DNA from: Macrostomum lignano
Lineage: Eukaryota
Length of the DNA stretch: 64,000 nt
Direction of reading: 5' to 3'
NCBI GenBank assembly: GCA_002269645.1
Contig: NIVC01001385.1
Span: 186,001-250,000, forward strand
The notes under the pieces are model-generated. The model saw nothing but the letters and a program-made list of their open reading frames with translations. It was not told where the DNA came from and searched no databases. The position numbers were made by a program, and so were the translations under genes. Shown here in pieces: positions 4,316 through 47,239 of the stretch (the stretch's first letter is position 1; every line of letters starts with the position of its first letter).

Positions 4316-7300
4316 ATGTCGCTCCGCTGCACAGATTGCTCTTCGGCCTTCTTTAGCCAGAAGCTGCTTAATCAGCACAAAAGAAAATGCACCGCAGCGG
4401 GTAGTAAAAAGACTCGATTCACCGTGTCAGTGCGAATGCCAGACGAGGAGGTCGCCGAGGTGGCCAGATCAGCGGCCGCTCAGCAGCAAGTGGATCAGGC
4501 GGTTGAAGAATCAACAGTTGTTGCATCGCCGCAGGCGGCTGACCAGCAGCAGCAGCAGCAGGAAGAGCAGCGGGACCATCAGCAGGAGCAGCCGCCGCCG
4601 CTGCCTGCTGTACACTTGAGCATCGGCGATGCCGAGAATGTCAGCCCTGCTGGCGGTGGCGGTGGTGTCGCTGTCCGCAGTGCCGTGGTGTCGCAGCAGC
4701 AGCAGCAGCATCACACCCGCCTGCTGCGCACCGACATTCCACTGCGTTCGCCAGTCGACAGGCGTCGGGTTGCTTGCAACGCCTGCGGCAAGATGTTCAC
4801 CGGTGCTCGCTGCTGCAACTGGCTGGCCGATCACCTGCGCATTGAACACCTTGACCAGCCGCCTCACGCTTGCCCGCACTGTGGCGCTCTGTTCGTGTAC
4901 TTTGACACGCTGCAGGTGTGTGTGTGTGCATGAGGTTGTAGTGCCTTAGTCCGCTTTGCAGTTTTCTGGATACAGAATACAGTAGAGAGCCACAGCTCTA
5001 TAGGGTCCTCATTTACTGGTTCACTAATCTCCCACAGTGTCAGTTGCTGGGCCAGCCGCCCAGTTCCTCAGTTGCTGGGCCAGCCGCCCAGATCCTCAGT
5101 TGCTGGGCCAGCCGCCCAGATCCTCAGTTGCTGGGCCAGCCGCCCAGATCCTCAATTGCTGGGCCAGCCGCCCAGATCCTCAGTTGCTGGGCCAGCCTCC
5201 CAGATCCTCAGTTGCTGGGCCAGCTTCCCAGAATGTCAGTTGCTGGGCCAGCCGCCCAGTTCCTCAGTTGCTGGGCCAGCCGCCCAGATCCTCAATTGCT
5301 GGGCCAGCCGCCCAGATCCTCAGTTGCTGGGCCAGCCTCCCAGATCCTCAGTTGCTGGGCCAGCTTCCCAGAATGTCAGTTGCTGGGCCAGCCGCCCAGT
5401 TCCTCAGTTGCTGGGCCAGCCGCCCAGATCCTCAGTTGCTGGGCCAGCCGCCCAGATCCTCAGTTGCTGGGCCAGCCGCCCAGATCCTCAGTTGCTGGGC
5501 CAGCCTCCCAGATCCTCAGTTGCTGGGCCAGCTTCCCAGAATGTCAGTTGCTGGGCCAGCCTTCCAAATCCTCAGTTGCTGGGTCAGCCTCCCAAACCCT
5601 CAGTTGCTGGGCCAGCCTCCCAGATCCTCAGTTGCTGGGCCAGCCTCCCAGCTGCTTAGGCAGTGGTCAATAAATGATCAAAGGTGCAGTCCGCCCGCCG
5701 CCCCACCTCCCTCTCCCAGGAACACGTGACCGCCAATCACGGCTCGGATGGCAGCAGAGCCGTTGTCGCCGCCGGAACCTCTGGCGACTCTGGCAGCAGC
5801 GACGCCAAACAGCAACAGGAGCAGGCGGAGGCCTCGGCTGGCGAAGGCTACGCTTATTGCTGCGGCCTCTGTAACGAGACCTATACGGACCTGCCTCTGT
5901 TGCTGAAGCATTTCTCCGATCTGCACCCGGAGTTCGCCTCCCAAGACGAATTGGTAGCGGCGGCCACCGCTCCGCTGCAGCAGCAGCAGCAGCAGATTCT
6001 GTACGCGTGCACCCTGTGCTCGCAGAGCTTCGATCAGCTGATGTCTGGCCAGCTGCATTTGCAGCGCAATCATCCCAATGAGTGGCGGCAGGTATATGCA
6101 GGCTCTAGTAGTTGACTCGGGGGGATGGGAATTGGAATAGAAATGCACTGCTGAAAACTTAATTGTCAGTTAGTCAAATGCATCCCATCATTAATCCCAA
6201 GTCTTACGCTGACACAGCTGAATAAAAAGGTAATTTTATGCTAGTTTCAACTACTACTTCTTCAGCTAGGGTCGTAGCCTAGTGGTTAGAGCGTCGGACT
6301 TGCGACTTGAAGGTCGGGGTTCGATTCCCGATCCTCCCACTGGAACAATTTGTGTCCTTGAGAAAGACACTTAAAACTCTGCATTGCTTCAGTTCATTCC
6401 AGCTGTAAAATGGGTGCCAGCATTAGCTGGGGTGATTGAGGGGGTGTGTGGCGACCCCCCCCCCCTCTGGGTGCCACTGAGTAGCCTATATCCAGTATAT
6501 CACCATCGCCAACTCCACCCAGATCGTGTGCTGCCCAGTCTGCCAGCTCAACTGCAAGACCGAGTCGCTCAACAAGACTCACATCTGGTCGGTTCACACC
6601 AATCCGAAATCATTGCCGGAAGGTCCCGTGCCCTGTCGTCTCTGCGTGTCTGCCAGAGTACAACAGCTTGGCAACAAGTCTGCCCAAGAGGCGGCCATGT
6701 TCGCCGGGCCGGAGCAGCTGTACGAGCACTACACCGCTGTACACTCCAAGCCGATGTCCGCTTTCATTGTTGAGACAACAGCGGCCGCCGTGGCCGCTGG
6801 CGGTGACACCCTGTATGAGTGCGGCGGCTGCAAGGCCCGCTATAAAGACCGAATGCTGCTGGAGGCTCACTTCCAGGCTGGTATGTTAAATAAGGTCTTT
6901 GTTAACGTGGCTCTTTTAAGTGAGACTGACTGAATTCCCTCTCTAACTCTGAGAATTGCCTGACTGAATTCCCTCTCTGACTCTGAGAATGGCCTGACTG
7001 AATTCCCTCTCTGACTTTGAGAATGACCTGACTGAATTCCCTCTCTGAGAATGGCCTGACTGAATTCCCTCTCTGAGAATGGCCTGACTGAATTCCCTCT
7101 CTGACTTTGAGAATGACCTGACTGAATTCCCTCTCTGAGAATGACCTGACTGAATTCCCTCTCTGAGAATGGCCTGACTGAATTCCCTCTCTGACTTTGA
7201 GAATGACCTGACTGAATTCCCTCTCTGACTTTGAGAATGACCTGACTGAATTCCCTCTCTGAGAATGACCTGACTGAATTCCCTCTCTGAGAATGGCCTG

Positions 7301-23589: not shown

Positions 23590-23887
23590 ATAATTATTGA
23601 TTACACCTGCCCTAATGAGCAGATGTACAAACGACAGCTCAGCAGCAGCTATTGTGCGGCGCATCTGAAGGCTGCGTACGGCTGTTCAGTCCAAGGACTG
23701 AGGGGGGGGGCCCACACCCTCAATTACACCAGCTAATGCTGGTACCCATTTTACAGCTCGGTGAACTGAAGCACTTAAGCAGAGTTAAGTGCTTTGCTCA
23801 AAGATACAATTGTTCTGAGTAGGTCGAGAATCGAACCCCCGACCTTTCAGTCGTGAGTGCGACGCTCTAATCACTAGACTAAACCCC
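23590..23887 (-). mobile_element. tRNA-derived SINE (same family as 6269-6480)
   Basis: Minus strand reads GGGGTTTAGTCTAGTGATTAGAGCG...GGTTCGATTCTC...GCTGTAAAATGGGTACCAGCATTAGCTGG, ending in an AT-rich tail. Confidence 0.85.
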
Positions 23888-24260
23888 AATCTCCAGTTGG
23901 GGATACACAAACTGAGGGTCTCAGTTTATGGGTTTGAAACGTCTTATCAACTTTCTATCAATCTCTTGCGAATTCCCGATGAAAACTGTACCTGGGACAA
24001 GAAGCGGCCCGGAGTCACTTGCATCACCCCAGAGTCGTTCTAGACGCGTTGCAGACGACACAGGTTAAATAGGAAAGAAGTGATTCTAAACGCCTCTAAA
24101 ACGACGAGATGTCGCGGTACAAGTCGCCAAAAAGTCGTCAAAGAGTCGCCCCAGAATCTTGACTTGACTTACTTGACTTAGCTGCAGGGCTGTCCCGGAG
24201 GGGACACAGCGGGAAGGCGCGGGCGCCCATTCCGCTAGTCCCTGAACGGCCGACGCGTCG

Positions 24261-27200
24261 CTATGGACGGAGGGTTGGCGCCGCCCAGGGAGGTCCCCCA
24301 GTGTCGCCAGCAGCTATGGTGCTCTCTGGAAAGGAGAGTTCAGCCCTGCGGGTGGCCCGAAGGTAGCGCATGAGCTGATTAAAGTTTTCGGGTTTGCACG
24401 CTTCAGTAATAGATGTGTGTGGCCCGAGGTAAGTGAGTCTGGCCCGCGTGAAGGCGGGACAGATGCTGACGAAATGCTCAGCGGTTTCGTCACCTGAGTT
24501 GCAGAAACTACAGGTGGCGTTGGTGGCGTTGCCCTGCAGGTACTGGTGCCTGGAGAAGCAGCCGTGACCAGAGAGGGTCATGGTGGCAGCCCGGATGTCT
24601 CTGCGCGAGAGGCGCAAGAGGAGCTTCCGGAGCTGGTGAGAGGGCTGAGGGACAGCGCCTCTGGATTGCCTGCAGTTCGTGCGGTTCGCCCAAGTCGAGC
24701 GGTGCTGAGTCCTGATCCACGCTTTGATGCGCGAGTCGATGACACAGCCAGGAATCGGGACAAGAGGTTCGGGGCCGAGAGAGGAGCCGGAGGCACCAAC
24801 TTTTGCAAGGGTGTCAGCCAACTCATTTCCTCGGATCCCCACATGCCCCGGAACCCACTTAAGGGTAATTTTGTTGGCGGAACCCAACACATTGAGGAGT
24901 TTGATACAGTCAAGGACTGTAGCAGAGTTGGTGCTGCAGCCACTGATGGCGTGCAAGGCAGCTTGGCTGTCCGAATGGAAAATGATGTTCTTACCAGTAA
25001 CGCCAGTGGCGAGAAGCTCTGCAGTGCAGGAGCTGATGGCCAGAACTTCATTTTGGAAAACACTGGAGTTGACCCCAGTGTATTGAGCGTGGGTAGCGAT
25101 GACCCTCCCGTTCAGAAAGATTCCAACACCAAAGCCGGTGTTGGCTGACTGCTTAGAACCGTCGGTGTAGCAATGAAGCTCACCAGGGTTCCAATGGTCA
25201 TTGATGTTATCGCGCGAGTCGATAGCTACGGAGTAGCGCTGTCTCAGGTTGAGCGTTGAGGCAATGCCATCGGTGAAGACGCGATTGGCCTGACACTCGT
25301 TGAGAAAGTTGAGGCACAGATCGCTATGCGGGACAAGGTTCCGCTTAGCAGGTGCTCTCATGTAAATGAATTTGACGCCGGCATCAATTAGACGCCGCGT
25401 CGTTCTAGCCGCCTCACCCCTGATGAAGAGGTCAAGAGGCGGAAGATTAAGAAAGGCCCCCATGCCAGCAAAGGGCGTGGACCTGGTGGCGTTGCAGATG
25501 AGCCTACACGCTCTGCCTTGGATCGTGTTGAGCAGGTCTGCATGGCTTTTGACCTGGGTAGCGCTAACCCAGACAACAGAGGCGTACGTAATGGCAGGTC
25601 TAACTACGGAAGTATAGATCCACCAAAGCCGCTTTGGGGATAGACCCCAAGAAGTGCCAAGTGCTCGTCGGAGCTGGGCCAGGATGGCTGAGGCACGCTT
25701 AGCTTTTGCTTTCACGTGGAAGGACCAGTTGAGCCGGTGGTCAAGTGTGACCCCGAGACATCTGGTCTGGTGCGCGAAGGCAATATCTCTGCCGTAGAGC
25801 TGCAGAGGACGTATGTTCCAGCGTAGTCTGCTGGTAAACATAATGGCAACGGTTTTGGGCTCAGAGAGTTCCAAACCATTGTCATTGGCCCAGGATTCTG
25901 CTTTGCGGATAAAGCTCTGCATCAGATCCCTGAGCGTGCTGGGAGACGGTCCTGCCACAATGGCCGTGACGTCATCAGCATACCCGACTTTGAAGACGGG
26001 GTCAGGTCGGGAGTCACTCAGAAGAGCGTCCATGACCAGGTTCCAGAGCGTCGGGGTGAGGACTCCGCCTTGGGGTCCACCCTTACAGACTCTGGTGGAG
26101 GCAGTTTGCCCAAGAAGTTGGGCAGTGACCGTACGGTTGGAGATCATGTACATGATCCACCGTATGAGGGTAGCATGAGCTTTGCGATTTTGAAGGGCCC
26201 TCTGAAACGCTTCAAAGATAACGTTGTCGAAGGCGCCAACAATGTCAAGAAAGAGAGCCAGGGCGTAACCGTCACCCAGTACCGCCCGTTCAATCTTTTC
26301 GACAATCGCATGCAGGGCGCTGTCAGTCGACCTCCCGGTACGGAAGGCGTGCTGATTATTGCTGAGGGGCATCGCTGTCAGCTCGCAGGAGAGCAGCCGC
26401 CAGAGAATAAGCCTCTCAGTGAGCTTAAGCATTGCTGACGTTAAGCTAATTGGCCGGAAGGCCTTGACGCTTTGGTAGTCACCCTTCCCAGGTTTGGGAA
26501 TAAAGACTACTCGAGCTTCAGTCCAGCTTTTGGGAACGTATCCCAGCTGGATAGAGGCCCGCATAAGATTGCGGGTGAGTCTCAGGAACGAGGGTATCTT
26601 GGCTGCTTCACGAAGGAGAACAGGGTAGATACCATCAGGTCCAGGAGATTTGAAGGGTTTGAAGGTTCTGACCGCACGAGCGATTAGGTCTTCAGTGACA
26701 ATGCCCGCCGCTAGGGTGGCTCCATCCATCGAATGGTTGGGCTCCGGTCTAGCAGTAGGTACCCTCGGGAAGAATGTGCTAAGCATATGCTGAAGCACTT
26801 CTTCAGGGTCTTTAGTAAGAGAGCCATCATCTTTTTTGATCATGGCTAATTTGGACATTTTGTCCATTGTAAGGGCCTTGACAAGCCTAGAAGTAGGTCT
26901 GTCTTGATCCAATTCATTGCAGAATTGGCGCCACTTACATTCCTTGGCCTTGCGCACTTCAGATTTGAAATTGCGGGAGGCTTGCCGGAAAAGCTCCATG
27001 TCCTCCGGGTTTCCGGTCTTCATGGCACGGCGATGAAGGCTTTTGGCCTTCCGCCTGAGTTTCCCCAGCTCCGGGTTCCACCACGGCGCCGAGGTCTTGC
27101 CTCTGTAGGCGCGAGCAGGACAAGCCGCTTCGTAGGCTGCAATAATGCAACCTGTCAGCGTCTCAGCCATATGATCCACATCCTCGCAGGTCTCAATCGG

Positions 27201-28000
27201 ACGTAAGTCCGTGAGTTCCTGCAGGTGCAGATCAAGGGCAGCCTTGTAGGCCGCCCAATCAGTGTTGCGGATATTGCGTCTCCAAGTGATCGGAGACTGG
27301 GTTTTAGTGTCCGCGATATTAAAGGCAATAAAGCAGTGGTCAGACAGGGAGGGCTCCTCAGACCAGACTCTCCACTCCTTGACTCTGTCAAAGAGTCTTG
27401 GGGTAACGAGTGTGGCGTCGAGGACCTCGGTCCATCTGCCATTATTAAAGGTAGGGTGCTGCCGCGGTTGCAGAGCATGAGGTTTGTGTTAGAGATGAGG
27501 GCCAGAAGCTCCTCTCCTCTAGTGTTGGTATCTTTGCTGCCCCAGTGCTTGTGGTGCGCGTTGAGGTCGCCCCCTAAGCACAGCTCAGCGTTCTGGGACT
27601 CGCAGTACTGCGCAAGGCGCAGTAAACTCTCGGGAGCAGGGTCTCTGTCGCCTGGGATATAAACCGAGGCAACAAGACACGTACGCGGAGAGAAATGATT
27701 AGATTGGATGACGCAAAGGTCTCCATCAGAGAGATCAGTCCTCAGCCAAGCCTGGAGATGGCTAGCAGCGAGGATAGCCGCTCTAGGGCGGCTGTTCCCC
27801 GGGCCACACACATAAAAATCAGAGTAGCCAGAGGGAATGTTGGGCAACTTACCGTTGCGCATCCAGGGTTCCTGGATCAGGATGAGGCCTGGCCTGTACA
27901 GCTCAGCAATCTTCATCAGATTTACTGACGCAGATACGCAATGCTGTAAATTTATTTGCAGACAGAATGTCGCTCCTTTGGCAGCGTGGAGCTTAGTCAT
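24261..28000 (-). CDS. LINE ORF2 (AP endonuclease - reverse transcriptase - RNase H - Zn knuckle), one frameshift at ~27454-27456
   Basis: APE motifs LQINLQH, LIQEPW, GGDLNAHH. RT motifs SPGPDG, RPISL, QGGVLTP, YADD. RNase H motifs YTDGS, SDSQAAL, WVPGH...NELAD. CSFC...EHF...CP. Adding one C in a CCC run restores STPTFNNGRW and fuses ORFs 27155..28000 and 24261..27179. Confidence 0.92.
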
Positions 28001-28039: not shown

Positions 28040-29545
28040 TCAAGGAGACTTGGACAACAGATCGTCCTCGTCCCAGGCCGCTGGGGCTTGACTGGGAGAT
28101 GGGAGTTGGTCGACGTCCATGGCCTCCTCACCCCCACCGGCCCCCCCAGCAGACTCCTCAGGCTCCGATGACAGGATGGAGGAAGCTTCCTCACCTGCAT
28201 CTTTACCTTCAGACCCCACCAAGGTGGCCGAGGAGAGCTCGGATTCCGAAGACCCGGCCTCGTCCTCAACTCCTTCTCCGACTGGCAGGTTTGGTTCCCG
28301 GGGCTCGGCCGGAGCCGTTACCGCGGTCGCCGAACTGCTGCTAGCAGAGGGGCGAGATGCAGCTTTGGCTTTGGGATCGGCTTGCGCCTTTCCTTGGGCC
28401 TTAGACTGCGCCCCGCTCTTGCCGGAGATGCCGGGGTTGGCAGTAGCCTTCCCTTTGGCAGACTTTCCTCGGCGCAACTTGAGCTTGAGGGCACCCAGCT
28501 GGAAAGAGGATCCATTAGGGTACCGACTCGCCCAAGTGCTGGAAAGGCCGAGGACAATTGAGTTGCCCGTCTCCCCCCTGCGGACTTTACGGTGATACAC
28601 CAGTCCACTAGCAGGGAGGTCGGGGTTCAGACGCAGTAGGACCCGGCGAATAACGTCTGGTCCAGCTGCGGTGCTCTTAGCAGGGACGAAAACCACATAG
28701 GGTATCGTCTTTGGACGCTGGCCCTCGCGAAGAAAAAGAGCTCCGCCAAGGTCAGCATCCAAGGAGACCGTCGGTAGCCGCTGGAGCAGCCGCCGAGCGT
28801 CCTCCTCGCTGCTAGGAGCAATAAGAACGAATGTGCTTCGCAGCACCATCCGCTCAACGCCGATGGAGATTCCCTCCTCGACAGTCAGCTCAATCAGATA
28901 GGAGTCAACAGCACTCCACACTTTTTGAAGCTGATCAGTGGTCCAGTCCTGGTCGCGACCTTGGATGATCACTCCCGGGATTTTGGCCTTGGCCTTCGCC
29001 GCAAAGGTAGCTCCCGAAGGAACCTCCTTGTTGGCAGTGGCCATTTGTTGCGCCGTGGTTTCGGCCTCAGCAGCCGCGGCAGCAGCTCCAGGGAGCGCCG
29101 CCGCTGAACTACTGGAGCTTCCACCGGCCGGCCCGCCTGGTTGCCTTGGGACTCCAGTCGCTTCAGCATCCATGGTGGACGCCGCCGCTTTGGCCCCCGC
29201 AGCTCCCTTCTTGGCCTGCCTTTTGGCGCGTTGTTTAGCGCGTTTGCGCTCAAGCCGAGCCCGCTGAGCTTCATCGGATCTGCCAGATTTGGCCGGTCCT
29301 TTAGGCTCAGAGCTCGCGGTTCCCTTAGATCCACCAGCGGAGCTGGCAGGTCTTAGGGTATTTTGAGTTTGGTAGCTCTGGTCGGATCTGCCAGCAGAGC
29401 CAGCCGGTCCTTCCTTTGCCACAGTTGAATCAGTCGGTTGGGATCTGCCAGCAGGGCCGGCCGGTCCTTCGGACTGAGGTTGGGGTTTAGAAGGGTCCCC
29501 ATCCCTAGAAATAGCTTGTTTATCCATAGTCGGCTCGAAGGCCAT
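28040..29545 (-). CDS. LINE ORF1 (501 aa)
   Basis: Long ORF between the 5' UTR and ORF2. Low-complexity N-terminus. Core YVVFVP...LLRLNPDLP...IVLGLS...FQLGALKL resembles the DUF4780-type ORF1 of LOA/R1-like elements (recognition from memory). Confidence 0.85.
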   Translation of the reverse strand: MAFEPTMDKQAISRDGDPSKPQPQSEGPAGPAGRSQPTDSTVAKEGPAGSAGRSDQSYQTQNTLRPASSAGGSKGTASSEPKGPAKSGRSDEAQRARLERKRAKQRAKRQAKKGAAGAKAAASTMDAEATGVPRQPGGPAGGSSSSSAAALPGAAAAAAEAETTAQQMATANKEVPSGATFAAKAKAKIPGVIIQGRDQDWTTDQLQKVWSAVDSYLIELTVEEGISIGVERMVLRSTFVLIAPSSEEDARRLLQRLPTVSLDADLGGALFLREGQRPKTIPYVVFVPAKSTAAGPDVIRRVLLRLNPDLPASGLVYHRKVRRGETGNSIVLGLSSTWASRYPNGSSFQLGALKLKLRRGKSAKGKATANPGISGKSGAQSKAQGKAQADPKAKAASRPSASSSSATAVTAPAEPREPNLPVGEGVEDEAGSSESELSSATLVGSEGKDAGEEASSILSSEPEESAGGAGGGEEAMDVDQLPSPSQAPAAWDEDDLLSKSP

Positions 29546-29822
29546 GATAAAGGTTGGTGGGCTACCCTCAAAGGGGCGCGGTACCCACCCGGCCGCTCCA
29601 CCTGACCGGGCAGTAGGCCAATAGCACCCTCAAGGCTGGCCCGACACCATGAGGGGGACCGCTTGCGACCGGACTACTCCCCGGCCTTCCAGCCCATCGG
29701 CACGGTCAACACCTTAGGCATTAGAGAGTACGTTGAGCAGTACCACGGCCTGCAGGTTGGCGAGCCAGACCCGCATACCCAAATTCGGCCGAAGCCACTG
29801 GATAGGGTCGCCAGCGCCGGAG

Positions 29823-30065
29823 CCCAGTCTGTCCAGCAGCCCTAGGGACTGCCTTGAACACACGCGGGGACGAGTACCCTGGGTCGACTTGCGAGACAGC
29901 GTGGGGGGGGGGGGTCTGCGGCTGCCAGAGGCAAATAGAGGGTGCAGACCTCCCACCAGCCTTGACCTGCTGAAGATAGGGGCAGGCGTGAAGCATCGCA
30001 GACCTTAGCCCATGGGCCTAGTCTGTCTCATACTTCACTGGCATGCTGAATACGCCTTCGCGTGC
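29823..30065 (-). ncRNA. Putative HDV-like self-cleaving ribozyme at the LINE 5' end
   Basis: P1 GCACGCG/CGCGUGU with a G1-U wobble; P3 GGG/CCC; L3 UACUCGU; P1.1 AC/GU; P4 GCAGUCCC-UA-GGGCUGC; J4/2 C-AGA; P2 CCCA(G)/(C)UGGG. G1 is the first base after the TSD. Confidence 0.75.
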
Positions 30066-30918
30066 CCAGAATCACTTTGAAGCGTTTTATTTTCTGCGAC
30101 TCTGAAACGATTCTGGGGCGACTCTAGCGACTCTGGGGCGACGGTATAACGATTCTGGAGCCGTAGAGCCGCATTAGAGTCACTGAGTTGTGTTTGAAGC
30201 GCATTTGCGTCGCTCGATGAATCAGAGTCACATTTACGGCGTTTCAGCGGCGTTCTGGAATCGCTGAAAAGTCGTCACAGAAGAAGCGCTTTAGCGTCAC
30301 TGCAGAATCGTTAGTGCAACACTTCTGAGGCGCTCTGGACACGTCACAGAGTCGTTACTACCAGCCTTAAACAGCCTGCTGGATCGTTACTTCTGGGCAA
30401 ATAGAAAATGCATGCTTATCAACTCAGAAGTGATGCACTAACGATTTTAAAATGACGCTAAAACGCTTCTTCTGCGACTTTTTTGACGACTTGTATGTGT
30501 CCATTACTCTGCCGCGTTCAGTGGCTTGCCTATTTATGCCGCCGCGCGGTCTTTGCGCTCTCGCCACTCTTTGCGCTCAATTTTTTGAAACGAAAAAAAA
30601 ATTGCTCGCAACTTGTGGAGAGTTCGTTTGCCGCTCCCCCCTTTAATGCTTCGTTGCGCTGTTGCCGCCTCGCTGCGCTTTGTTCGCCTCTTGGCCTGTG
30701 CATCCTCATGGTTCAGAGTCGTTAGAATCACTTCTTTCCTATTTAAACTGTCATCCGAACGCGTCTGAATCGACTCTGGGGCGACGCAAGTGACTCCGGG
30801 ACGCTTCTTGGCCTGGGTGCCGTTTTCATCGGGCAATAAACACTCAGTTTGAGCCTATTGAACTCAAATTGCACTAACTAGTCTACTCGGTTAGCGGAAA
30901 GTTAAGCGCCAGCACAAC

Positions 30919-32757
30919 CAGGGGCGTCGCCAACGGGGGGACAGGGACATGTCCCCCCAGTAAAAGATTTGAGGGGGACATGCCATTGCTTTGTCCCCCC
31001 ACCCCACCTTGTGATCCGTTATGGAAATCAATAATTTTGCAGCTGGGCGACAAAAAAAAGCGCCTGCGGCGCTGAAATGAGTGCCTGCGGCGCTAAAATG
31101 AGAGCCTGCGGCGCTAAAATGAGTGCCTGCGGCGCTAAAATGAGAGCCTGCGGCGCTAAAATGAGAGCCTGCGTCGCTAAAATGAGAGCCTGCGGCGCTA
31201 AAATGAGTGCCTGCGGCGCTAAAATGAGAGCCTGCGGCGCTAAAATGAGAGCCTGCGGCGCTAAAATAAGAGCCTGCGGCGCTAAAATGAGAGCCTGCGG
31301 CGCTAAAATGAGTGCCTGCGGCGCCAAAATGAGAGCCTGCGGCGCTAAAATGAGTGCCTGCGGCGCTAAAATGAGAGCCTGCGGCGCTAAAATGAGTGCC
31401 TGCGGCGCTAAAATGAGAGCCTGCGGCGCTAAAATGAGAGCCTGCGGCGCTAAAATGAGAGCCTGCGGCGCTAAAATGAGTGCCTGCGGCGCCAAAATGA
31501 GAGCCTGCGGCGCTAAAATGAGTGCCTGCGGCGCCAAAATGAGAGCCTGCGGCGCTAAAATGAGAGCCTGCGGCGCTAAAATGAGTGCCTGCGGCGCCAA
31601 AATGAGAGCCTGCGGCGCTAAAATGAGAGCCTGCGGCGCTAAAATGAGAGCCTGCGGCGCTAAAATGAGTGCCTGCGGCGCTAAAATGAGAGCCTGCGGC
31701 GCTAAAATGAGAGCCTGCGGCGCTAAAATGAGAGCCTGCGGCGCTAAAATGAGTGCCTGCGGCGCCAAAATGAGTGCCTGCGGTACTAAAATGAGTGCCT
31801 GCGGCGCCAAAATCAGTGCCTGCGGCCCTAAAATGAGTGCCTGCGGCGCTAAAATGAGTGCTTGCAGAGCCAAAATAAGAGCCTGTGGCGCTAAAATGAG
31901 AGCCTGCGTCGCTAAAATGAGAGCCTGCGGCGCTAAAATGAGTGCCTGCGGCGCTAAAACGAGAGCCTGCGGCGCTAAAATGAGAGCCTGCGGCGCTAAA
32001 ATAAGAGCCTGTGGCGCTAAAATGAGAGCCTGCGTCGCTAAAATGAGAGCCTGCGGCGCTAAAATGAGTGCCTGCGGCGCTAAAATGAGAGCCTGCGGCG
32101 CTAAAATGAGAGCCTGCGGCGCTAAAATGAGTGCCTGCGGCGCTAAAATGAGAGCCTGCGGCGCTAAAATGAGAGCCTGCGGCGCTAAAATGAGAGCCTG
32201 CGGCGCTAAAATGAGTGCCTGCGGCGCCAAAATGAGAGCCTGCGGCGCTAAAATGAGTGCCTGCGGCGCCAAAATGAGAGCCTGCGGCGCTAAAATGAGT
32301 GCCTGCGGCGCCAAAATGAGTGCCTGCGGCGCCAAAATGAGAGCCTGCGGCGCTAAAATGAGTGCCTGCGGCGCTAAAATGAGAGCCTGCGGCGCTAAAA
32401 TGAGTGCCTGCGGCGCTAAAATGAGAGCCTGCGGCGCTAAAATGAGAGCCTGCGGCGCTAAAATGAGAGCCTGCGGCGCTAAAATGAGTGCCTGCGGCGC
32501 CAAAATCAGTGCCTGCGGCCCTAAAATGAGTGCCTGCGGCGCTAAAATGAGTGCTTGCAGAGCCAAAATAAGAGCCTGTGGCGCTAAAATGAGTGCCTGC
32601 GGCGCCAAAATGAGTGCTGACAACACCGATTTTGAAAATAATGTACATGCAGGAAGTTAGTAGTACTACTTACAGTAATACTAGTAACAATGTACATGTA
32701 CGTGTATAATTGTTGGCTTTGCCCCCCCCCACCAAAAAATCCATGGCGACGCCCCTG
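30919..32757. mobile_element. hAT-type MITE carrying an expanded internal satellite
   Basis: Perfect 14-bp TIR CAGGGGCGTCGCCA / TGGCGACGCCCCTG. Exact 8-bp TSD AGCACAAC at 30911-30918 and 32758-32765. Confidence 0.92.
31070..32615. repeat. 21-bp satellite (GCCTGCGGCGCTAAAATGAG[A/T])n, ~73 copies
   Basis: Tandem array inside the MITE. Being 21 bp and stop-free in several frames, it produces the 527-585 aa artefact ORFs. Confidence 0.97.
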
Positions 32758-43698: not shown

Positions 43699-44223
43699 GT
43701 GACACCAAGCGCTGTCAACTATATGTTTTCGGACTCTATCGACTATATAGTCTCGGATTGTCAAAGTGGGGACCCAAACCGAACAGCGACTTGCACTTTC
43801 AACACCGTCCTTGGCGCCATCACGGGCCTGATTCTGCCTGTTTTCGTTGTCTCCGGTCTCGTGTTCAACGCTCTAATTGTACACATCAACCTGGTCAAAC
43901 AGTCGTGGACTCGACAGAATGTGTACATCAGCATAATTGCGGTCACAGACAGCTGCAACATCATCGTGAACGGCTTCATGTGGATGTTATTGGCCAAGGG
44001 CTTGCCATGGTTAACCAACGGATCCGTCGGTTATGTACATCTCAACGACGGAGACGTGCAGTGTAGATTTGCCAAATATTTTGAGCACCTGTGCCACCTA
44101 ACATCGACTGCAGTGTTTCTGCTAATGGTTACCGACAGGACTCTAAGCCTGTACTTTCCATTTAAATTTCAGAGCATCAGCGGAAAGGCTGCGATGAAGG
44201 CTGGGTTATTGGTGATCCTGGCC

Positions 44224-44428
44224 GCATGCAAGGTGGGTTCAGCACGTTTGTGTAGCAGGAGACAGACCAGGCCTACGAGCTAAGGTCTGCGATCCTACAC
44301 ACCTCCACCCCCTCTATTCTGGTGCAGGAATGGCAGGAGAACTCTCTCCAAGCTGACTCACAAGTCGACCCAGGGGTTCACGCCCCGCATGTGTTCAAGG
44401 CAGCTCTAGGGCTGCTGGACTGACTGGG
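44224..44428 (+). ncRNA. Putative HDV-like self-cleaving ribozyme at the LINE 5' end
   Basis: P1 GCAUGC (44224) / GCAUGU (44387-92); P2 CCCAG (44369-73) / CUGGG (44424-28); P3 GGG/CCC; L3 UUCACGC; P4 GCAGCUC-UA-GGGCUGC (44400-15); J4/2 C44420-UGA. Confidence 0.8.
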
Positions 44429-46475
44429 CTCCGGCGGCGGCAACCCATCGGTGGCCAGTAGGCCAAGTTGGGTATGGGCTCCGCCCAGAAGTGAACCTGT
44501 GCGTATCAGGTACCTCTGGCCACCGCTCTGAGGAACAGGTATCACCCTCTGACCTTAACAGGGTATGCGACCAGTCCGCAGGCTCCGGAGGCAGTCCTCC
44601 TGCTTCCCTCAAGGGCCCAGTTTAGTACCGCGCTGATGGTCCTTTGGTTCGGCCTCTGGGTTTTCCAAGCCGGGCTCTTCGCCGGGGAGTTTCTCGGTTG
44701 CTAGCGGTCGGGCCGGTAAGGGCTTAAGCCACCCCCCGGTCGCTACCTCTTGGCCTGCCGGTGGGTTTGGGGTTACGGCCCAGCAGCTTCTCACCTCTAG
44801 TCCCCATTCGTCTTTCAGCGACTCATGTAGTATTCATTTACATCCAACACGTCCGAGGCTGCTGGAGCACCAACCGAGGTTGGTACCGCGGCCCAGCCGG
44901 ACATTCGCAACACCGGAACCTCCGGTGCCTCTCAGTCTGCCGCTGCCGCCGCTTAGGACAACACCGGAGTGGCTGGACAACAGGACAGCAGACCTCAGAT
45001 TTCTAAAAAGAAGGCCCGTAGCATTGCTCGCTACAAAGAGTTTCTCCAGCGCAAAGTGGAGGAACGGAGGAATGCGAAAGCCGCCCCTCCGGCCACCTCC
45101 GAGGAGGGTGCCGGTAACTCTGCGAACCCCGCGGAGGAGCCGACATCCGACAAGGGGGTGGACCCCGCGCGCCGGTCAGATGCATCAGGTGCCGCCGAAG
45201 CTCCTGGTGCGGCTGGCCCCTCCCGTGACTGGACCTCTGCCCGTGTGGAAGCTCCACGGCTGTGGAGAGATCCAAAGCGGGGGGTGCTGGCCAAACCACC
45301 AAGCCGAAGCGCACCTACGCGGCTATGGCCAAGAGGCAGCCGGCCCTGGTTATCCAAGGCCAGGAGACGCCTCTTACGGCCGAACAGTTCGACCTTATCT
45401 GGCGCCGGTTGGAGAGGACGGCTATCATTACTAGAGAGACCGGGAAGTCTCCTTTCAAGTCACCGGGACCTGACAACATTTATCCTGCCTTCCTCCATGA
45501 GGCAGTTAAAAATGACAGGTTTCTCGGCCTCCTCTGCAACCTCTTCAAGGCCAGCATTACCCTCGGGTATGTGCCAAAAGCCTGGCAAGAGGCTACGGTA
45601 GTCTTCATACCCAAGCCAGGAAAGGGAGACTATCACTCTGCCAAAGCTTACCGCCCTATCAGTCTGACGTCTTTCTTCCTCAAACTGATGGAACAGATGG
45701 TGCTCTGGCTGAGGAAAAGCTGAGGAACTCCCCGCTCTCCCCAAATAAGCACGCCTTTCGTCCTGGACGCTCCATCGAAAGTGCGCTGCACCCCATTGTC
45801 GACAAGCTGGAGCGCGCCGTGCTTGGCTGTGGATACGCACTGTCGCTTTTCCTCGACATTGATGGTGCTTTCAATAATGTGCTCTTTAAAGCCTTTAAGC
45901 GGGCCCTGGAATCCCGGGCACGCACGAGCACCTCACTCGCTGGATCATGTACGTGGTCTCCCATCGTACTGCCACCTCGCATCTTCTGGGACACTCACGC
46001 TCCGTGGAAGTCCAGAAAGACGGACCGCAAGGTGGAGTCCTCAGCCCGATCCTCCGGAATTTAGTCATGGCTGCTTTTCCAGGCATCGTCAACTCCAGGG
46101 AAAAATCCGCAGTGAGGAATGCCCATTCTGCCTCTCCGGTGTCGAGAATGCGGAGCACTTCATCTGTGAATGCCCCGCCTTTACTCAGGACAGGCTCACC
46201 AACCTCGGCCCAAACCCGGACCTCTCCGATGTTTTCAGGCCCGAGAATCTCTGCCAGCTCGTCCGCTACCTAAGGGCTACCGGGCGAGCGACAATCCACC
46301 TCCTGGACTCTCCGGAGGGGGACCGCGCTGCGGACACCGGCGCCACCGGAACTCCCTGCGCGACACCGCAGCACCAGCTGCCCGTGGTCGCCAAAGGCTA
46401 GCAAAATGGGCGGCAACGCCTCCTCGCTGTTTCCGGACGCACGGAGCCCCCTACAACTAAGTCAAGTAAGTCAAA
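44224..46475 (+). mobile_element. Internally deleted LOA-like LINE (2.25 kb) with both termini intact
   Basis: 5' end homologous to the element at 30065. Partial ORF1, an RT piece (SPGPDNIYP, RPISL) and the C-terminal CPFC...EHFICECP. Tail TAAGTCAAGTAAGTCAA. TSD ATCCTGGCC (44215-44223 / 46479-46487; 12 bp with 1 mismatch). Confidence 0.9.
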
Positions 46476-47239
46476 GTTATCCTGGCCTGCTTGGTTGTCA
46501 CCCTTCCCATCGCCTTCATTTTTGATATCTACGTAGTCTGCTACTTCAGCTTCCACGAAATGTTACCATGGCAACACACCGTTCTGTACTACTATTCGGC
46601 TTTGCTTTACTACCCACCGGCCCTTTTACTGGCGATTATTTTCATTGAGAACTGTTTCCTGATTCACAAGGTACGAGAGATCACCGCCAATAGAAAGAGG
46701 CTGGGCTCTGCTAAGGAATCTGATGACGGGCTAGTAAACACAGTGATCTGCCTCGCTCTGTCGGTCTGTCTGCTTCTGTCTGCCTCGCTGACCTTCTTTG
46801 CCCAAACCAGCGAGTACGTTCTAACGCTGCTTTTTGGCGGAATCGATTATAACAGGGCCACCGTGTTGTGGGGAGTTCACGACATCGGCATCTCGACCAT
46901 CATCATTGGCCAGTCCACCAACTGGATCCTGCTGGTGTGGAAGAATGCCAAGATTGGAAACGGTAAAGTACTGAAAGCCGGTGGATCAGAAGATGGCTAC
47001 CACAGCCACAAGTTAAATTTGGATTTCATTACAGTGAGAGAAATTAGCACTAGCTAGAGGAGATAAATTGCATGACAGCAAGCAAAACTATTATTTTTGT
47101 TCTAGTACTTCTAGAACTTGAGAACTTCGACTGTTTTCAACTCGAAAAACTGATCAAGAAATAAAAGTCATATTACATCAAAAAAACTTTTTTGATCCAA
47201 GATACGCTTTTTATTCGGATAATTATTGCAATCGTTACC

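What the first reader, a model, noticed from the sequence alone, without database searches (positions are those of the whole stretch)
29823..30065. HDV-like self-cleaving ribozyme whose predicted cleavage site is exactly the 5' end of a full-length LOA-like LINE
Seen: read on the minus strand from 30065, the first base after the TSD starts P1 (GCACGCG). It pairs ~200 nt later with CGCGUGU, giving the G1-U wobble. In HDV order the sequence then gives P2 CCCA(G), P3 GGG, L3 UACUCGU, P3' CCC, P1', GU (pairing with AC in L3 as P1.1), P4 hairpin GCAGUCCCUAGGGCUGC, J4/2 C-A-G-A and P2' CUGGG. J1/2 is a ~175-nt insert. One G is shared between P2 and P3 (GGG where the sister copy has GGGG), possibly a homopolymer error. 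Established: HDV-like ribozymes process the 5' ends of R2, RTE, L1Tc and insect LOA (Baggins) elements. Inference: a functional ribozyme that frees the element RNA from host read-through transcripts. I do not know of such a ribozyme described in flatworm LOA-like elements.
Basis: partly seen in the sequence, partly recalled or inferred. Interest (0 to 1): 0.85.

Follow-up and report, generated by a model that had tools for sequence, protein, structure and literature searches.

The report
Self-cleaving ribozyme heading a flatworm LINE
The first ~243 bases of a 5.9-kb jumping gene (LINE) of the flatworm Macrostomum lignano fold like an HDV-type self-cleaving RNA that would cut exactly at the element's first base, a known trick of such elements that had not been reported for this animal or this element family.

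Summary
The candidate catalytic C is at 29831.

A loose HDV descriptor that allows a long J1/2 matches hundreds of places by chance, so the fold alone proves little. The support comes from comparison:
- A second copy in the window starts at 44224. It is flanked by an unambiguous 9-bp target-site duplication.
- A 58%-identical element is on a public contig (L001).
- A 33%-identical element is on a metagenome contig (L025).

In the first two the fold starts exactly at the element's first base; in L025 it starts at an AT-rich to GC-rich switch. Seventeen of 19 core pairs change on both sides and stay paired. The unpaired core bases (L3 U1, C5, G6; J4/2 C and G) never change. The 133-175-nt J1/2 insert is a closed, structured domain, as in known large HDV-like ribozymes.

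Caveats:
- Rfam models do not detect it.
- Copy A lacks one G at the P2/P3 junction and has a frameshifted ORF2, so this copy may be weakened.
- L001 and L025 have G-C, not G·U, at the cleavage site.
- Cleavage is untested.

Verdict: a probable HDV-like ribozyme, a new member of a known kind.

The parts
30066..30073 (-). 5' copy of the target-site duplication GATTCTGG of copy A
   Evidence: It is identical to 24151-24158. The following base is G at both ends, so the boundary is ambiguous by 1 nt.
30059..30065 (-). P1 5' strand GCACGCG. The predicted cleavage is 5' of G 30065, the first base of the element.
   Evidence: RNAalifold recovers P1 on an unbiased alignment.
29884..30058 (-). J1/2 peripheral domain, 175 nt. 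It is closed by a helix 3 nt after P1 and 7 nt before P2.
   Evidence: The same closed topology is seen in B (139 nt), L001 (163 nt) and L025 (133 nt).
29988..30038 (-). Most conserved hairpin inside J1/2, holding GGCCCAUGGGCUAAGGUCUGCGAU.
   Evidence: It is 88% identical over 41 nt to L001, whereas ORF1 is only 39% identical at the amino-acid level.
29880..29883 (-). P2 5' strand CCCA (CCCAG if G 29879 is shared with P3)
29877..29879 (-). P3 5' strand GGG. Copy B has GGGG here.
29870..29876 (-). L3 UACUCGU. U at position 1 and G at position 6 are the reverse-wobble positions. A-C at positions 2-3 pair with P1.1.
   Evidence: positions as in PMC13635239
29867..29869 (-). P3 3' strand CCC
29860..29866 (-). 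P1 3' strand CGCGUGU (G1·U wobble)
29858..29859 (-). P1.1 strand GU
29836..29852 (-). P4 hairpin GCAGUCCCUAGGGCUGC. It can be extended by UCA/UGG from the flanking strands.
29827..29835 (-). J4/2 UGGACAGAC. The candidate general-acid C is at 29831.
   Evidence: The C and the G two bases later are invariant in all four sequences.
29823..29826 (-). P2 3' strand UGGG
29546..29822 (-). Rest of the 5' UTR, with further blocks conserved among A, B and L001
28040..29545 (-). ORF1, 501 aa, no Pfam hit. The central ~180 aa are 39% identical to ORF1 of L001.
27155..28000 (-). ORF2 N-terminal piece with the APE endonuclease. The frame is lost near 27455.
24261..27179 (-). ORF2 main piece: reverse transcriptase, RNase H and a C-terminal Cys/His motif
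24159..24260 (-). 3' UTR ending in a (UAAGUCAAG)n tail
24151..24158 (-). 3' copy of the target-site duplication GATTCTGG
44215..44223 (+). Copy B: 5' copy of the target-site duplication ATCCTGGCC
44224..44428 (+). Copy B ribozyme. P1 GCAUGC 44224-44229; J1/2 44230-44368; P2 CCCAG 44369-44373; P3 GGG 44374-44376; L3 UUCACGC 44377-44383; P3' 44384-44386; P1' GCAUGU 44387-44392; P1.1 GU 44393-44394; P4 44400-44415; J4/2 UGGACUGA 44416-44423; P2' CUGGG 44424-44428.
   Evidence: It is the only hit of the strict descriptor in the window.
44224..46478 (+). Copy B, an internally deleted 2,255-bp element with the same tail. Its ORF fragments are about 80% identical (aa) to L001.
46479..46487 (+). Copy B: 3' copy of the target-site duplication ATCCTGGCC

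Best explanation
The window comes from Macrostomum lignano. The first ~243 nt of a 5.9-kb non-LTR retrotransposon (ORF1; ORF2 with APE, RT and RNase H) encode an HDV-like, nested double-pseudoknot self-cleaving ribozyme. Its P1 helix begins with the element's first nucleotide.

Proposed mechanism; every step below is inferred and none was shown here:
- When the element is transcribed as part of a longer RNA (read-through from upstream, or from any promoter 5' of it), the 5' UTR folds co-transcriptionally.
- The 133-175-nt J1/2 insert forms its own closed, multi-branched domain. This holds P1 next to P2, the 'pinch' described for large HDV-like ribozymes.
- The J4/2 cytosine (29831 in copy A) and a Mg2+ ion held by the L3 U·G reverse wobble catalyse attack of the 2'-OH of the upstream nucleotide.
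- This releases an element RNA that starts with a 5'-OH on G1.
- Target-primed reverse transcription of that RNA to its end then gives full-length insertions starting exactly at G1.
- As proposed for R2 and L1Tc, the folded ribozyme may also help translation of the uncapped RNA. The strongly conserved hairpin in J1/2 may bind an element protein.

What is shown is the fold, its position at the element boundary, its conservation and its covariation. Cleavage itself and its biological role are inferred.
For: (1) All elements of the fold are at the stated coordinates.

(2) The boundary coincides with G1 in independent insertions.
- Copy B has a 9-bp TSD, and G 44224 is the first base of its P1.
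- In copy A the TSD ends at G 30065, within 1 nt.
- The Logan contig L001 begins at the G of its P1.
- In L025 the G1 lies where the sequence switches from 32% to 57% GC, 1.9 kb upstream of ORF2.

(3) Covariation.
- In a four-sequence core comparison, 75 of 76 cells are standard pairs and 17 of 19 pairs change on both sides. Sliding the partner by 1-3 columns gives 28-50% paired.
- On an unbiased MAFFT alignment, RNAalifold itself pairs columns 1-6 with P1' and finds two compensatory changes there.

(4) The unpaired catalytic-core positions are invariant: L3 U1, C5 and G6; J4/2 C and the G two bases later. They correspond to the U20·G25 reverse wobble and the C75/C57 of solved HDV-family structures. 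An A three bases after the C, as in the C57/A60 arrangement, is present in A, B and L025 (PMC13635239).

(5) Single-sequence minimum-energy folds of B and L001 give P1, P3, P4 and the J1/2 domain without any constraint. For A the fold is within 2.8 kcal/mol of the minimum, before any credit for the pseudoknots.

(6) The J1/2 domain is closed by a helix 3-5 nt from P1 and 6-7 nt from P2 in all four sequences. This is the topology that activates large HDV-like ribozymes (PMC4908430).

(7) Constraint on the core. It is 92% identical between A and B, although the reverse-transcriptase fragments that survive in B are only 60-70% identical (aa) to A.

(8) Specificity.
- The core descriptor gave 0 hits on control strands of 69 kb of ORF2-upstream sequence. 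On the sense strand only L001 and L025 had hits.
- None of 3000 anchored shuffles per sequence matched.

(9) Precedent. HDV-like ribozymes cleave at the 5' end of R4, Dong, baggins, L1Tc and RTE elements (PMC3774820; PMC3185411).
Against: - No Rfam family reaches even E = 10. This holds for the whole window at gathering thresholds, for 29600-30300, and for the compact core of copy B alone.
- Copy A, the sequence actually flagged, lacks one G at the P2/P3 junction. It has either a 4-bp P2 with a 5-nt stretch from the C to P2', or a 2-bp P3, and it fails my strict descriptors. Its ORF2 is also frameshifted, so it may be a decaying copy.
- L001 and L025 have a G-C pair, not the canonical G·U wobble, at the cleavage site.
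- In A and B, a 5-bp alternative pairing GUUCA/UGGAC can sequester both the P1.1 strand and the catalytic C.
- Only four sequences were available. The core comparison was fitted by eye to the structure, so its pair counts lean towards it.
- The L001 contig start is only indirect evidence for an element or RNA end.
- Most of the ~24 distant relatives with enough upstream sequence showed no match.
- No cleavage assay and no RNA-end data exist.
Confidence: 0.8

Rival explanations
1. The conserved structure is real but not catalytic. The 5' UTR folds into a long-range pseudoknotted domain that serves as a protein-binding site, an IRES-like element or (at the DNA level) an internal promoter. On this view the 5' end at G1 is set by transcription initiation, not by cleavage.
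For: - The hairpin in J1/2 is far more conserved in sequence than a mere structural 'pinch' would need: 88% over 41 nt between families whose ORF1 is 39% identical.
- Further 5' UTR blocks downstream of the ribozyme are conserved too.
- In L1Tc the same 77 nt are both promoter and ribozyme (PMC3383444), and the R2 5' pseudoknot binds R2 protein (PMC6765202). Non-catalytic roles of such folds therefore have precedent.
- Rfam models do not recognise it.
- L001 and L025 have G-C at the cleavage site.
Against: - A non-catalytic scaffold would not need the invariant unpaired bases at exactly the positions of the HDV catalytic core (L3 U1 and G6; a J4/2 C three bases before P2'). It also would not need a 2-bp P1.1 that covaries.
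- The roles are not exclusive. In the known cases they coexist with cleavage.
Confidence: 0.12
2. The ribozyme family is genuine, but the flagged copy (29823-30065) is an inactive or crippled relic. The loss of one G at the P2/P3 junction, in a copy whose ORF2 is already frameshifted, has damaged the core.
For: - Copy A has GGG where B has GGGG.
- This leaves a 4-bp P2 and five bases from the catalytic C to P2', or else a 2-bp P3.
- Copy A fails the strict descriptors that B, L001 and L025 pass.
- There is a frameshift near 27455.
- Dead R2 copies with dead ribozymes are documented (PMC3774820).
Against: - L001 also has only three G here, followed by a C before P2' that could compete for the first G, so this junction tolerates variation.
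- Copy A keeps a perfect 7-bp P1, a 2-bp Watson-Crick P1.1 and all invariant core bases.
- The single-base differences (this G and the frameshift) could be long-read homopolymer errors. That cannot be checked here.
Confidence: 0.35
3. The match is chance. With a 175-nt J1/2 allowed, an HDV-type descriptor fits many GC-rich sequences.
For: - The loose descriptor matched 213 times on one strand of the window.
- 0.6-2.3% of shuffles match an anchored loose descriptor.
Against: - The fold is kept, with compensatory changes in 17 of 19 pairs, in four elements down to 33% ORF2 identity.
- None of 3000 shuffles per sequence had the core features.
- It always starts at the element boundary.
Confidence: 0.03

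Closest known systems
HDV-like ribozymes at the 5' end of non-site-specific LINEs: L1Tc/NARTc (Trypanosoma cruzi), baggins (LOA clade, Drosophila) and RTE elements
   Same: - The ribozyme occupies the very start of the element, and the cleavage site is the element's first nucleotide (PMC3185411, PMC3774820).
- The element has TSDs and an APE-RT-RNase H ORF2, like L1Tc (PMC6765202).
- The presumed role is release of element RNA from longer transcripts.
   Different: - L1TcRz is compact (77 nt). Here a 133-175-nt structured domain sits in J1/2.
- The host is a free-living flatworm.
- Two of the four sequences have G-C instead of G·U at the cleavage site.
- Activity is untested.
- Whether the element belongs to the LOA clade was not tested.
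Large HDV-like ribozymes with a J1/2 peripheral domain: drz-Agam-2 of Anopheles and the ~184-nt R2 ribozyme of Drosophila
   Same: - A stable, closed domain (P1.2-like closing helix) is inserted between P1 and P2 with short single-stranded linkers. This is the arrangement shown to accelerate cleavage by bringing P1 and P2 together (PMC4908430).
- R2 also carries its ribozyme in the first ~184 nt (PMC6765202).
   Different: - The J1/2 domain here is multi-branched. It holds a hairpin whose sequence, not only its pairing, is conserved between families.
- P2 is short (4-8 bp, against 12 bp in Agam-2).
- R2 is site-specific and is mostly cleaved within the upstream 28S sequence. These elements are dispersed and are cut at their own first base.
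Compact HDV-family ribozymes with solved structures (mammalian CPEB3, C. briggsae, Ackermannviridae phage)
   Same: - Same core geometry: a 3-bp P3 and a 7-nt L3 with U at position 1 and G at position 6.
- P1.1 is formed by L3 positions 2-3.
- The catalytic C lies three bases before P2', with A at +3 in three of the four sequences.
- Copy B has a C-G plus U·U P1.1, like the U21:U38 pair described in PMC13635239.
   Different: Those ribozymes are ~68 nt with a J1/2 of a few nucleotides, and they are not parts of retrotransposons.
Ribozymes of flatworm retrotransposons: twister variants in Schistosoma mansoni non-LTR elements, and the predicted R2 ribozyme of the planarian Schmidtea mediterranea
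   Same: Same host phylum and the same general logic: a self-cleaving RNA processes a non-LTR element transcript (PMC8501958, PMC3774820).
   Different: - The S. mansoni elements use a different ribozyme class (twister variants).
- The planarian case is a site-specific R2, with cleavage predicted 28 nt upstream in the 28S rRNA.
- No paper in the searched library mentions HDV-like ribozymes in Macrostomum.

Membership tests
HDV-like self-cleaving ribozymes | A P1 helix of 6-7 bp whose first nucleotide is the cleavage site, with its 3' strand directly after P3' | tested here: met
   A GCACGCG/CGCGUGU; B GCAUGC/GCAUGU; L001 GCCUGC/GCAGGC; L025 GGGGGGG/CCCCCCC. RNAalifold predicts P1 on an unbiased alignment, with two compensatory pairs.
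HDV-like self-cleaving ribozymes | A P2 helix that encloses P3, P1' and P4 and crosses P1 (first pseudoknot) | tested here: met
   CCCA(G)/(C)UGGG in A, CCCAG/CUGGG in B, CUCAGA/UCUGAG in L001, AACCUGAA/UUCAGGUU in L025. All four compared pairs covary. In copy A, P2 is only 4 bp unless a G is shared with P3.
HDV-like self-cleaving ribozymes | A 3-bp P3 closing a ~7-nt L3 that carries the U/G reverse-wobble pair | tested here: met
   P3 is GGG/CCC in three sequences and ACC/GGU in L025. L3 is UACUCGU, UUCACGC, UCUCCGU or UCUACGU, so U1 and G6 are invariant. Positions are as for U20·G25 in PMC13635239. PMC3774820 also describes the G as conserved and necessary.
HDV-like self-cleaving ribozymes | P1.1: the two nucleotides after P1' pair with L3 (second pseudoknot) | tested here: met
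   AC/GU in A, CU/AG in L001 and L025 (both pairs compensatory), and C-G plus U·U in B. A non-Watson-Crick second pair occurs in active natural ribozymes (PMC13635239).
HDV-like self-cleaving ribozymes | A P4 hairpin followed by J4/2 with the catalytic cytosine a few bases before P2' | tested here: met
   J4/2 holds C-U-G-A in B and L025, C-U-G-C in L001 and C-A-G-A-(C) in A. The C and the G are invariant, and P4 covaries at all four compared pairs. In copy A the spacing is one base longer, or else P3 is one pair shorter.
HDV-like self-cleaving ribozymes | A G·U wobble at the cleavage-site base pair | tested here: inconclusive
   G·U in both M. lignano copies (A and B), but G-C in L001 and L025. 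I could not establish from the accessible literature how far natural active members tolerate G-C.
HDV-like self-cleaving ribozymes | Recognition by a curated covariance model of the clan (Rfam HDV ribozyme, CPEB3, drz-Agam and related families) | tested here: not met
   No match at gathering thresholds on the window. None at E <= 10 on 29600-30300 or on the B core alone. The long J1/2 insert and the narrowness of those models may explain this, but the test itself was negative.
HDV-like self-cleaving ribozymes | Mg2+-dependent self-scission giving a 2',3'-cyclic phosphate and a 5'-OH, abolished by mutation of the J4/2 C | not testable with these tools
   This needs an in vitro transcription and cleavage assay.
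LOA-clade non-LTR retrotransposons | An ORF2 with APE endonuclease, reverse transcriptase and RNase H, plus a separate ORF1 | tested here: met
   Pfam Exo_endo_phos, RVT_1 and RNase_H hits, with ORF1 upstream. This architecture is shared by several other clades as well, for example I, R1, Tad1 and ingi/L1Tc (my own knowledge).
LOA-clade non-LTR retrotransposons | Phylogenetic placement of the RT with LOA, baggins, Lian and Bilbo reference elements | not tested
   No reference LINE clade sequences were on hand. The named hits are M. lignano gene models and unnamed metagenome proteins.

The most novel reading that the evidence does not exclude
This may not be just one more 5' ribozyme. It could be the founding example of an unannotated, ancient class of large HDV-like ribozymes that is invisible to Rfam.

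- The class would be shared by a whole clade of RNase H-bearing LINEs in diverse animals. L025 shares the architecture, and even the linker motifs AA(A)UG and AAGUC, at only 33% ORF2 identity.
- Its J1/2 domain would be a conserved functional module, for example the binding site of the element's own protein, or an IRES or promoter element. That would couple self-cleavage to ribonucleoprotein assembly or translation.
- The G-C cleavage-site pair would be a tolerated natural variant.
Probability: 0.3. Interest if true: 0.6.

Novelty: new member of a known kind. Interest (0 to 1): 0.45.

Why it matters
- If active, the ribozyme explains how this family of Macrostomum LINEs gets a precise 5' end without needing its own promoter at base 1. 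It adds a free-living flatworm and a new element family to the list of retrotransposons that rely on HDV-like ribozymes. Parasitic flatworm LINEs were reported to use twister variants instead.
- It shows that curated models miss large-J1/2 members, so such ribozymes are probably under-counted in animal genomes.
- The four sequences offer natural variants for testing how peripheral domains and the cleavage-site pair tune HDV-type catalysis: G·U against G-C at the cleavage site, a 4-8-bp P2, and a conserved J1/2 hairpin.
- Practically, G1 gives annotators an exact 5' boundary for these elements in M. lignano, a transgenic model organism.

Tried and rejected
- Rfam at gathering and at E <= 10 on the window, on the 700-nt neighbourhood and on the compact core of copy B: no HDV-family hit.
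- My first descriptor was far too loose, with hundreds of hits. It is reported as evidence that a descriptor match alone means little. Tighter versions were then used.
- An exact-pattern scan of JGI metagenomes for the conserved J1/2 block found 0 hits.
- A look-up of copy A's ORF1 by exact sequence found nothing on record.
- Homologue searches with ORF1, alone and as a two-sequence profile, found only chimeric M. lignano UniRef gene models without contigs. A genome-wide census of copies was therefore impossible. The M. lignano assembly is not in any collection these tools can read.
- Other contigs fetched were not informative. P0001 had no DNA. L002 and L005 start inside ORF1. L003 and L004 have no convincing match. 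L086 is a 5'-truncated fragment nested in a Pao/BEL LTR element.
- MAFFT could not align the four cores correctly, so the count of structure pairs was not used and the pair table was computed in a script.
- A covariance model built from A and B found only A and B, plus one truncated, unconvincing hit at the end of L073. It was too sequence-specific to reach L001 or L025.
- The idea that the homology upstream of G1 between A and B means the element extends further 5' was rejected. The shared bases are the two TSDs.
Full report
**What is there.**

| Part | Sequence | Window coordinates |
|---|---|---|
| P1 | GCACGCG | 30065-30059 |
| J1/2 | 175 nt | 30058-29884 |
| P2 | CCCA | 29883-29880 |
| P3 | GGG | 29879-29877 |
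| L3 | UACUCGU | 29876-29870 |
| P3' | CCC | 29869-29867 |
| P1' | CGCGUGU (G1·U) | 29866-29860 |
| P1.1 | GU | 29859-29858 |
| P4 | GCAGUCCCUAGGGCUGC | 29852-29836 |
| J4/2 | UGGACAGAC (C at 29831) | 29835-29827 |
| P2' | UGGG | 29826-29823 |

**The element.**
- It is a 5,907-bp non-LTR retrotransposon.
- ORF1 is at 28040-29545.
- ORF2 has APE, reverse transcriptase and RNase H domains (27155-28000 and 24261-27179). It is split by a frameshift near 27455.
- A (UAAGUCAAG)n tail follows, and an 8-bp target-site duplication (TSD) GATTCTGG flanks the element at 30066-30073 and 24151-24158.
- The closest named proteins are Macrostomum lignano gene models at 79-98% identity, so the window is from that flatworm.
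- 'LOA-like' was not tested beyond the domain architecture.

**Is it more than chance?** The fold alone is not.
- An HDV-type descriptor allowing a J1/2 of up to 300 nt matched 213 times on one strand of the window.
- Anchored at base 1, a loose descriptor is met by 0.6-2.3% of dinucleotide shuffles. None of 3000 shuffles per sequence also had the L3 U/G and P1.1 core features.
- A strict descriptor has a single hit in 128 kb, and that hit is the sister copy, not the flagged one.
- Rfam finds nothing, even at E <= 10 and even on the compact core alone.

**Comparative evidence.** The case rests on three relatives.

1. Copy B lies on the + strand at 44224-46478. It is internally deleted and has the same tail. 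Its 9-bp TSD ATCCTGGCC is unambiguous, and the element starts at G 44224, the first base of a P1 that reads GCAUGC/GCAUGU. This is a C-G to U-A compensatory change relative to copy A. The bases upstream of G1 that A and B share are simply the two TSDs.
2. L001 is a 6.5-kb Logan contig that carries an intact element. ORF2 is 58% identical and ORF1 is 39% identical over its central ~180 aa. The contig begins at the G of P1 GCCUGC/GCAGGC and has the same architecture with different helix sequences.
3. L025 is a metagenome contig with an element only 33% identical in ORF2.
   - The fold starts at G 2666, 1.9 kb upstream of ORF2, where the sequence switches from 32% to 57% GC.
   - Its helices and loops are P1 GGGGGGG/CCCCCCC, J1/2 133 nt, P2 AACCUGAA/UUCAGGUU, P3 ACC/GGU, L3 UCUACGU, P1.1 AG, P4 CUGCAG-GAGA-CUGCAG and J4/2 GCUGA.
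   - Control strands of the same 69 kb of upstream regions gave no hit.

**Covariation and conservation.**
- On an unbiased MAFFT alignment of A, B and L001, RNAalifold itself pairs the first six columns with P1'. It also finds the J1/2 closing helix, the inner hairpin and P3.
- In a structure-guided four-sequence comparison of the core, 75 of 76 cells are standard pairs, and 17 of 19 pairs change on both sides while staying paired. Sliding the partner by 1-3 columns gives 28-50%. This comparison was fitted to the structure by eye and uses only four sequences, so it leans towards the structure.
- The unpaired positions do the opposite of the helices. L3 U1, C5 and G6, the J4/2 C, and the G two bases after it never change.
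- These are the positions of the reverse-wobble U·G and the catalytic C in solved HDV-family structures. There, P1.1 is also formed by L3 positions 2-3 and may contain a U·U or C·U second pair (PMC13635239; also PMC3774820 for the L3 G).
- Minimum-energy folds of B and L001 give P1, P3 and P4 without constraints.
- The core is 92% identical between A and B, although the reverse-transcriptase fragments surviving in B are only 60-70% identical (aa) to A.

**The J1/2 insert.**
- It is not a spacer. In all four sequences it folds into a closed, multi-branched domain whose closing helix sits 3-5 nt after P1 and 6-7 nt before P2.
- Large HDV-like ribozymes with such domains are known (drz-Agam-2, R2). 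[quoted passage not shown]
- One hairpin (29988-30038) is conserved in sequence as well as in pairing across families. This hints at a further role, such as protein binding, translation or a promoter. That role was not tested.

**Deviations.**
- Copy A has one G fewer than B at the P2/P3 junction. This gives a 4-bp P2, or a 2-bp P3 if the G is shared. With its frameshifted ORF2, it may be a weakened copy. Alternatively, both defects may be long-read assembly errors. L001 also has three G here, but it forms a 6-bp P2 and a 3-bp P3 without sharing a G.
- L001 and L025 have G-C instead of G·U at the cleavage site.
- In A and B an alternative GUUCA/UGGAC pairing could trap P1.1 and the catalytic C.

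**Mechanism (inferred).** Transcripts that enter the element from upstream fold the 5' UTR. The J1/2 domain pinches P1 against P2. The J4/2 C and a Mg2+ ion at the L3 wobble cleave 5' of G1. The 5'-OH RNA is then copied to its end by target-primed reverse transcription. This explains why insertions begin at G1. A 585-codon ORF on the same strand just upstream (30891-32648) could supply such read-through, but that is speculation.

**Comparison with what is known.**
- HDV-like ribozymes at LINE 5' ends are established for R2, R4, Dong, baggins, RTE and L1Tc (PMC3774820, PMC3185411, PMC6765202).
- A planarian R2 ribozyme has been predicted (PMC3774820).
- Schistosoma non-LTR elements use twister variants (PMC8501958).
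- No paper in the library connects HDV-like ribozymes with Macrostomum.

**Verdict.** This is a new member of a known kind. It is well supported as a fold and as an element boundary, but it is untested as a catalyst. My confidence is about 0.8 that the family is a genuine HDV-like ribozyme and about 0.65 that copy A itself is still active. Interest is moderate, at 0.45.

Noticed in passing
30066-30073 / 24151-24158 and 44215-44223 / 46479-46487: The two target-site duplications resemble each other: GATTCTGG, and ATCCTGGCC preceded by G. This hints at a target preference of about GATYCTGG for the element's endonuclease. There are only two sites, so it may be coincidence.
   Followed up: partly
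23975-24100 and 30712-30833: Copy A sits between two arms of an older inverted repeat (84% identity, opposite orientation). It therefore seems to have inserted into another repeat.
   Followed up: no
6268-6336 and 23702-23881: There is a tRNA-like sequence (Rfam tRNA, 32 bits, just above threshold), with a 79%-similar inverted copy about 280 bp beyond the 3' end of copy A. ARAGORN calls no tRNA. It looks like a tRNA-derived SINE-type repeat.
   Followed up: partly
44224-46478: Copy B is a mosaic. Its ORF fragments are about 80% identical (aa) to the L001 family and only 55-70% identical to copy A. Its ribozyme core, however, is 92% identical (nt) to copy A and unlike L001. This suggests either exchange of 5' ends between families or very strong constraint.
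   Followed up: partly
29546-29822; 44429-44800; L001 238-547: The 5' UTR downstream of the ribozyme holds further blocks conserved between families, for example CCGGGGAGU and UUGGCCUACUGCC. Their function is unknown.
   Followed up: no
29884-29890; 24159-24182; L025 2795-2802: The linker between the J1/2 domain and P2 reads AAGUC in A, B and L025 and AAGCC in L001. The element's 3' tail is made of UAAGUCAAG repeats. A possible link between the 5' and 3' ends was not explored.
   Followed up: no
29903-29914: There is a run of 12 C in the J1/2 domain of copy A that is absent from copy B. Such homopolymers are prone to long-read assembly error, as are the GGG/GGGG difference and the ORF2 frameshift.
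   Followed up: no
30891-32648 (minus strand): A 585-codon ORF with a weak SNAP/TPR-like Pfam hit lies just upstream of copy A on the same strand. It is a possible host transcription unit that could read through into the element.
   Followed up: no
L073 1-32 (minus strand): A partial match to the ribozyme core (GGGG..CCCC, then GUGUUCA) is cut off by the end of a metagenome contig, with E = 0.15. It cannot be judged.
   Followed up: no
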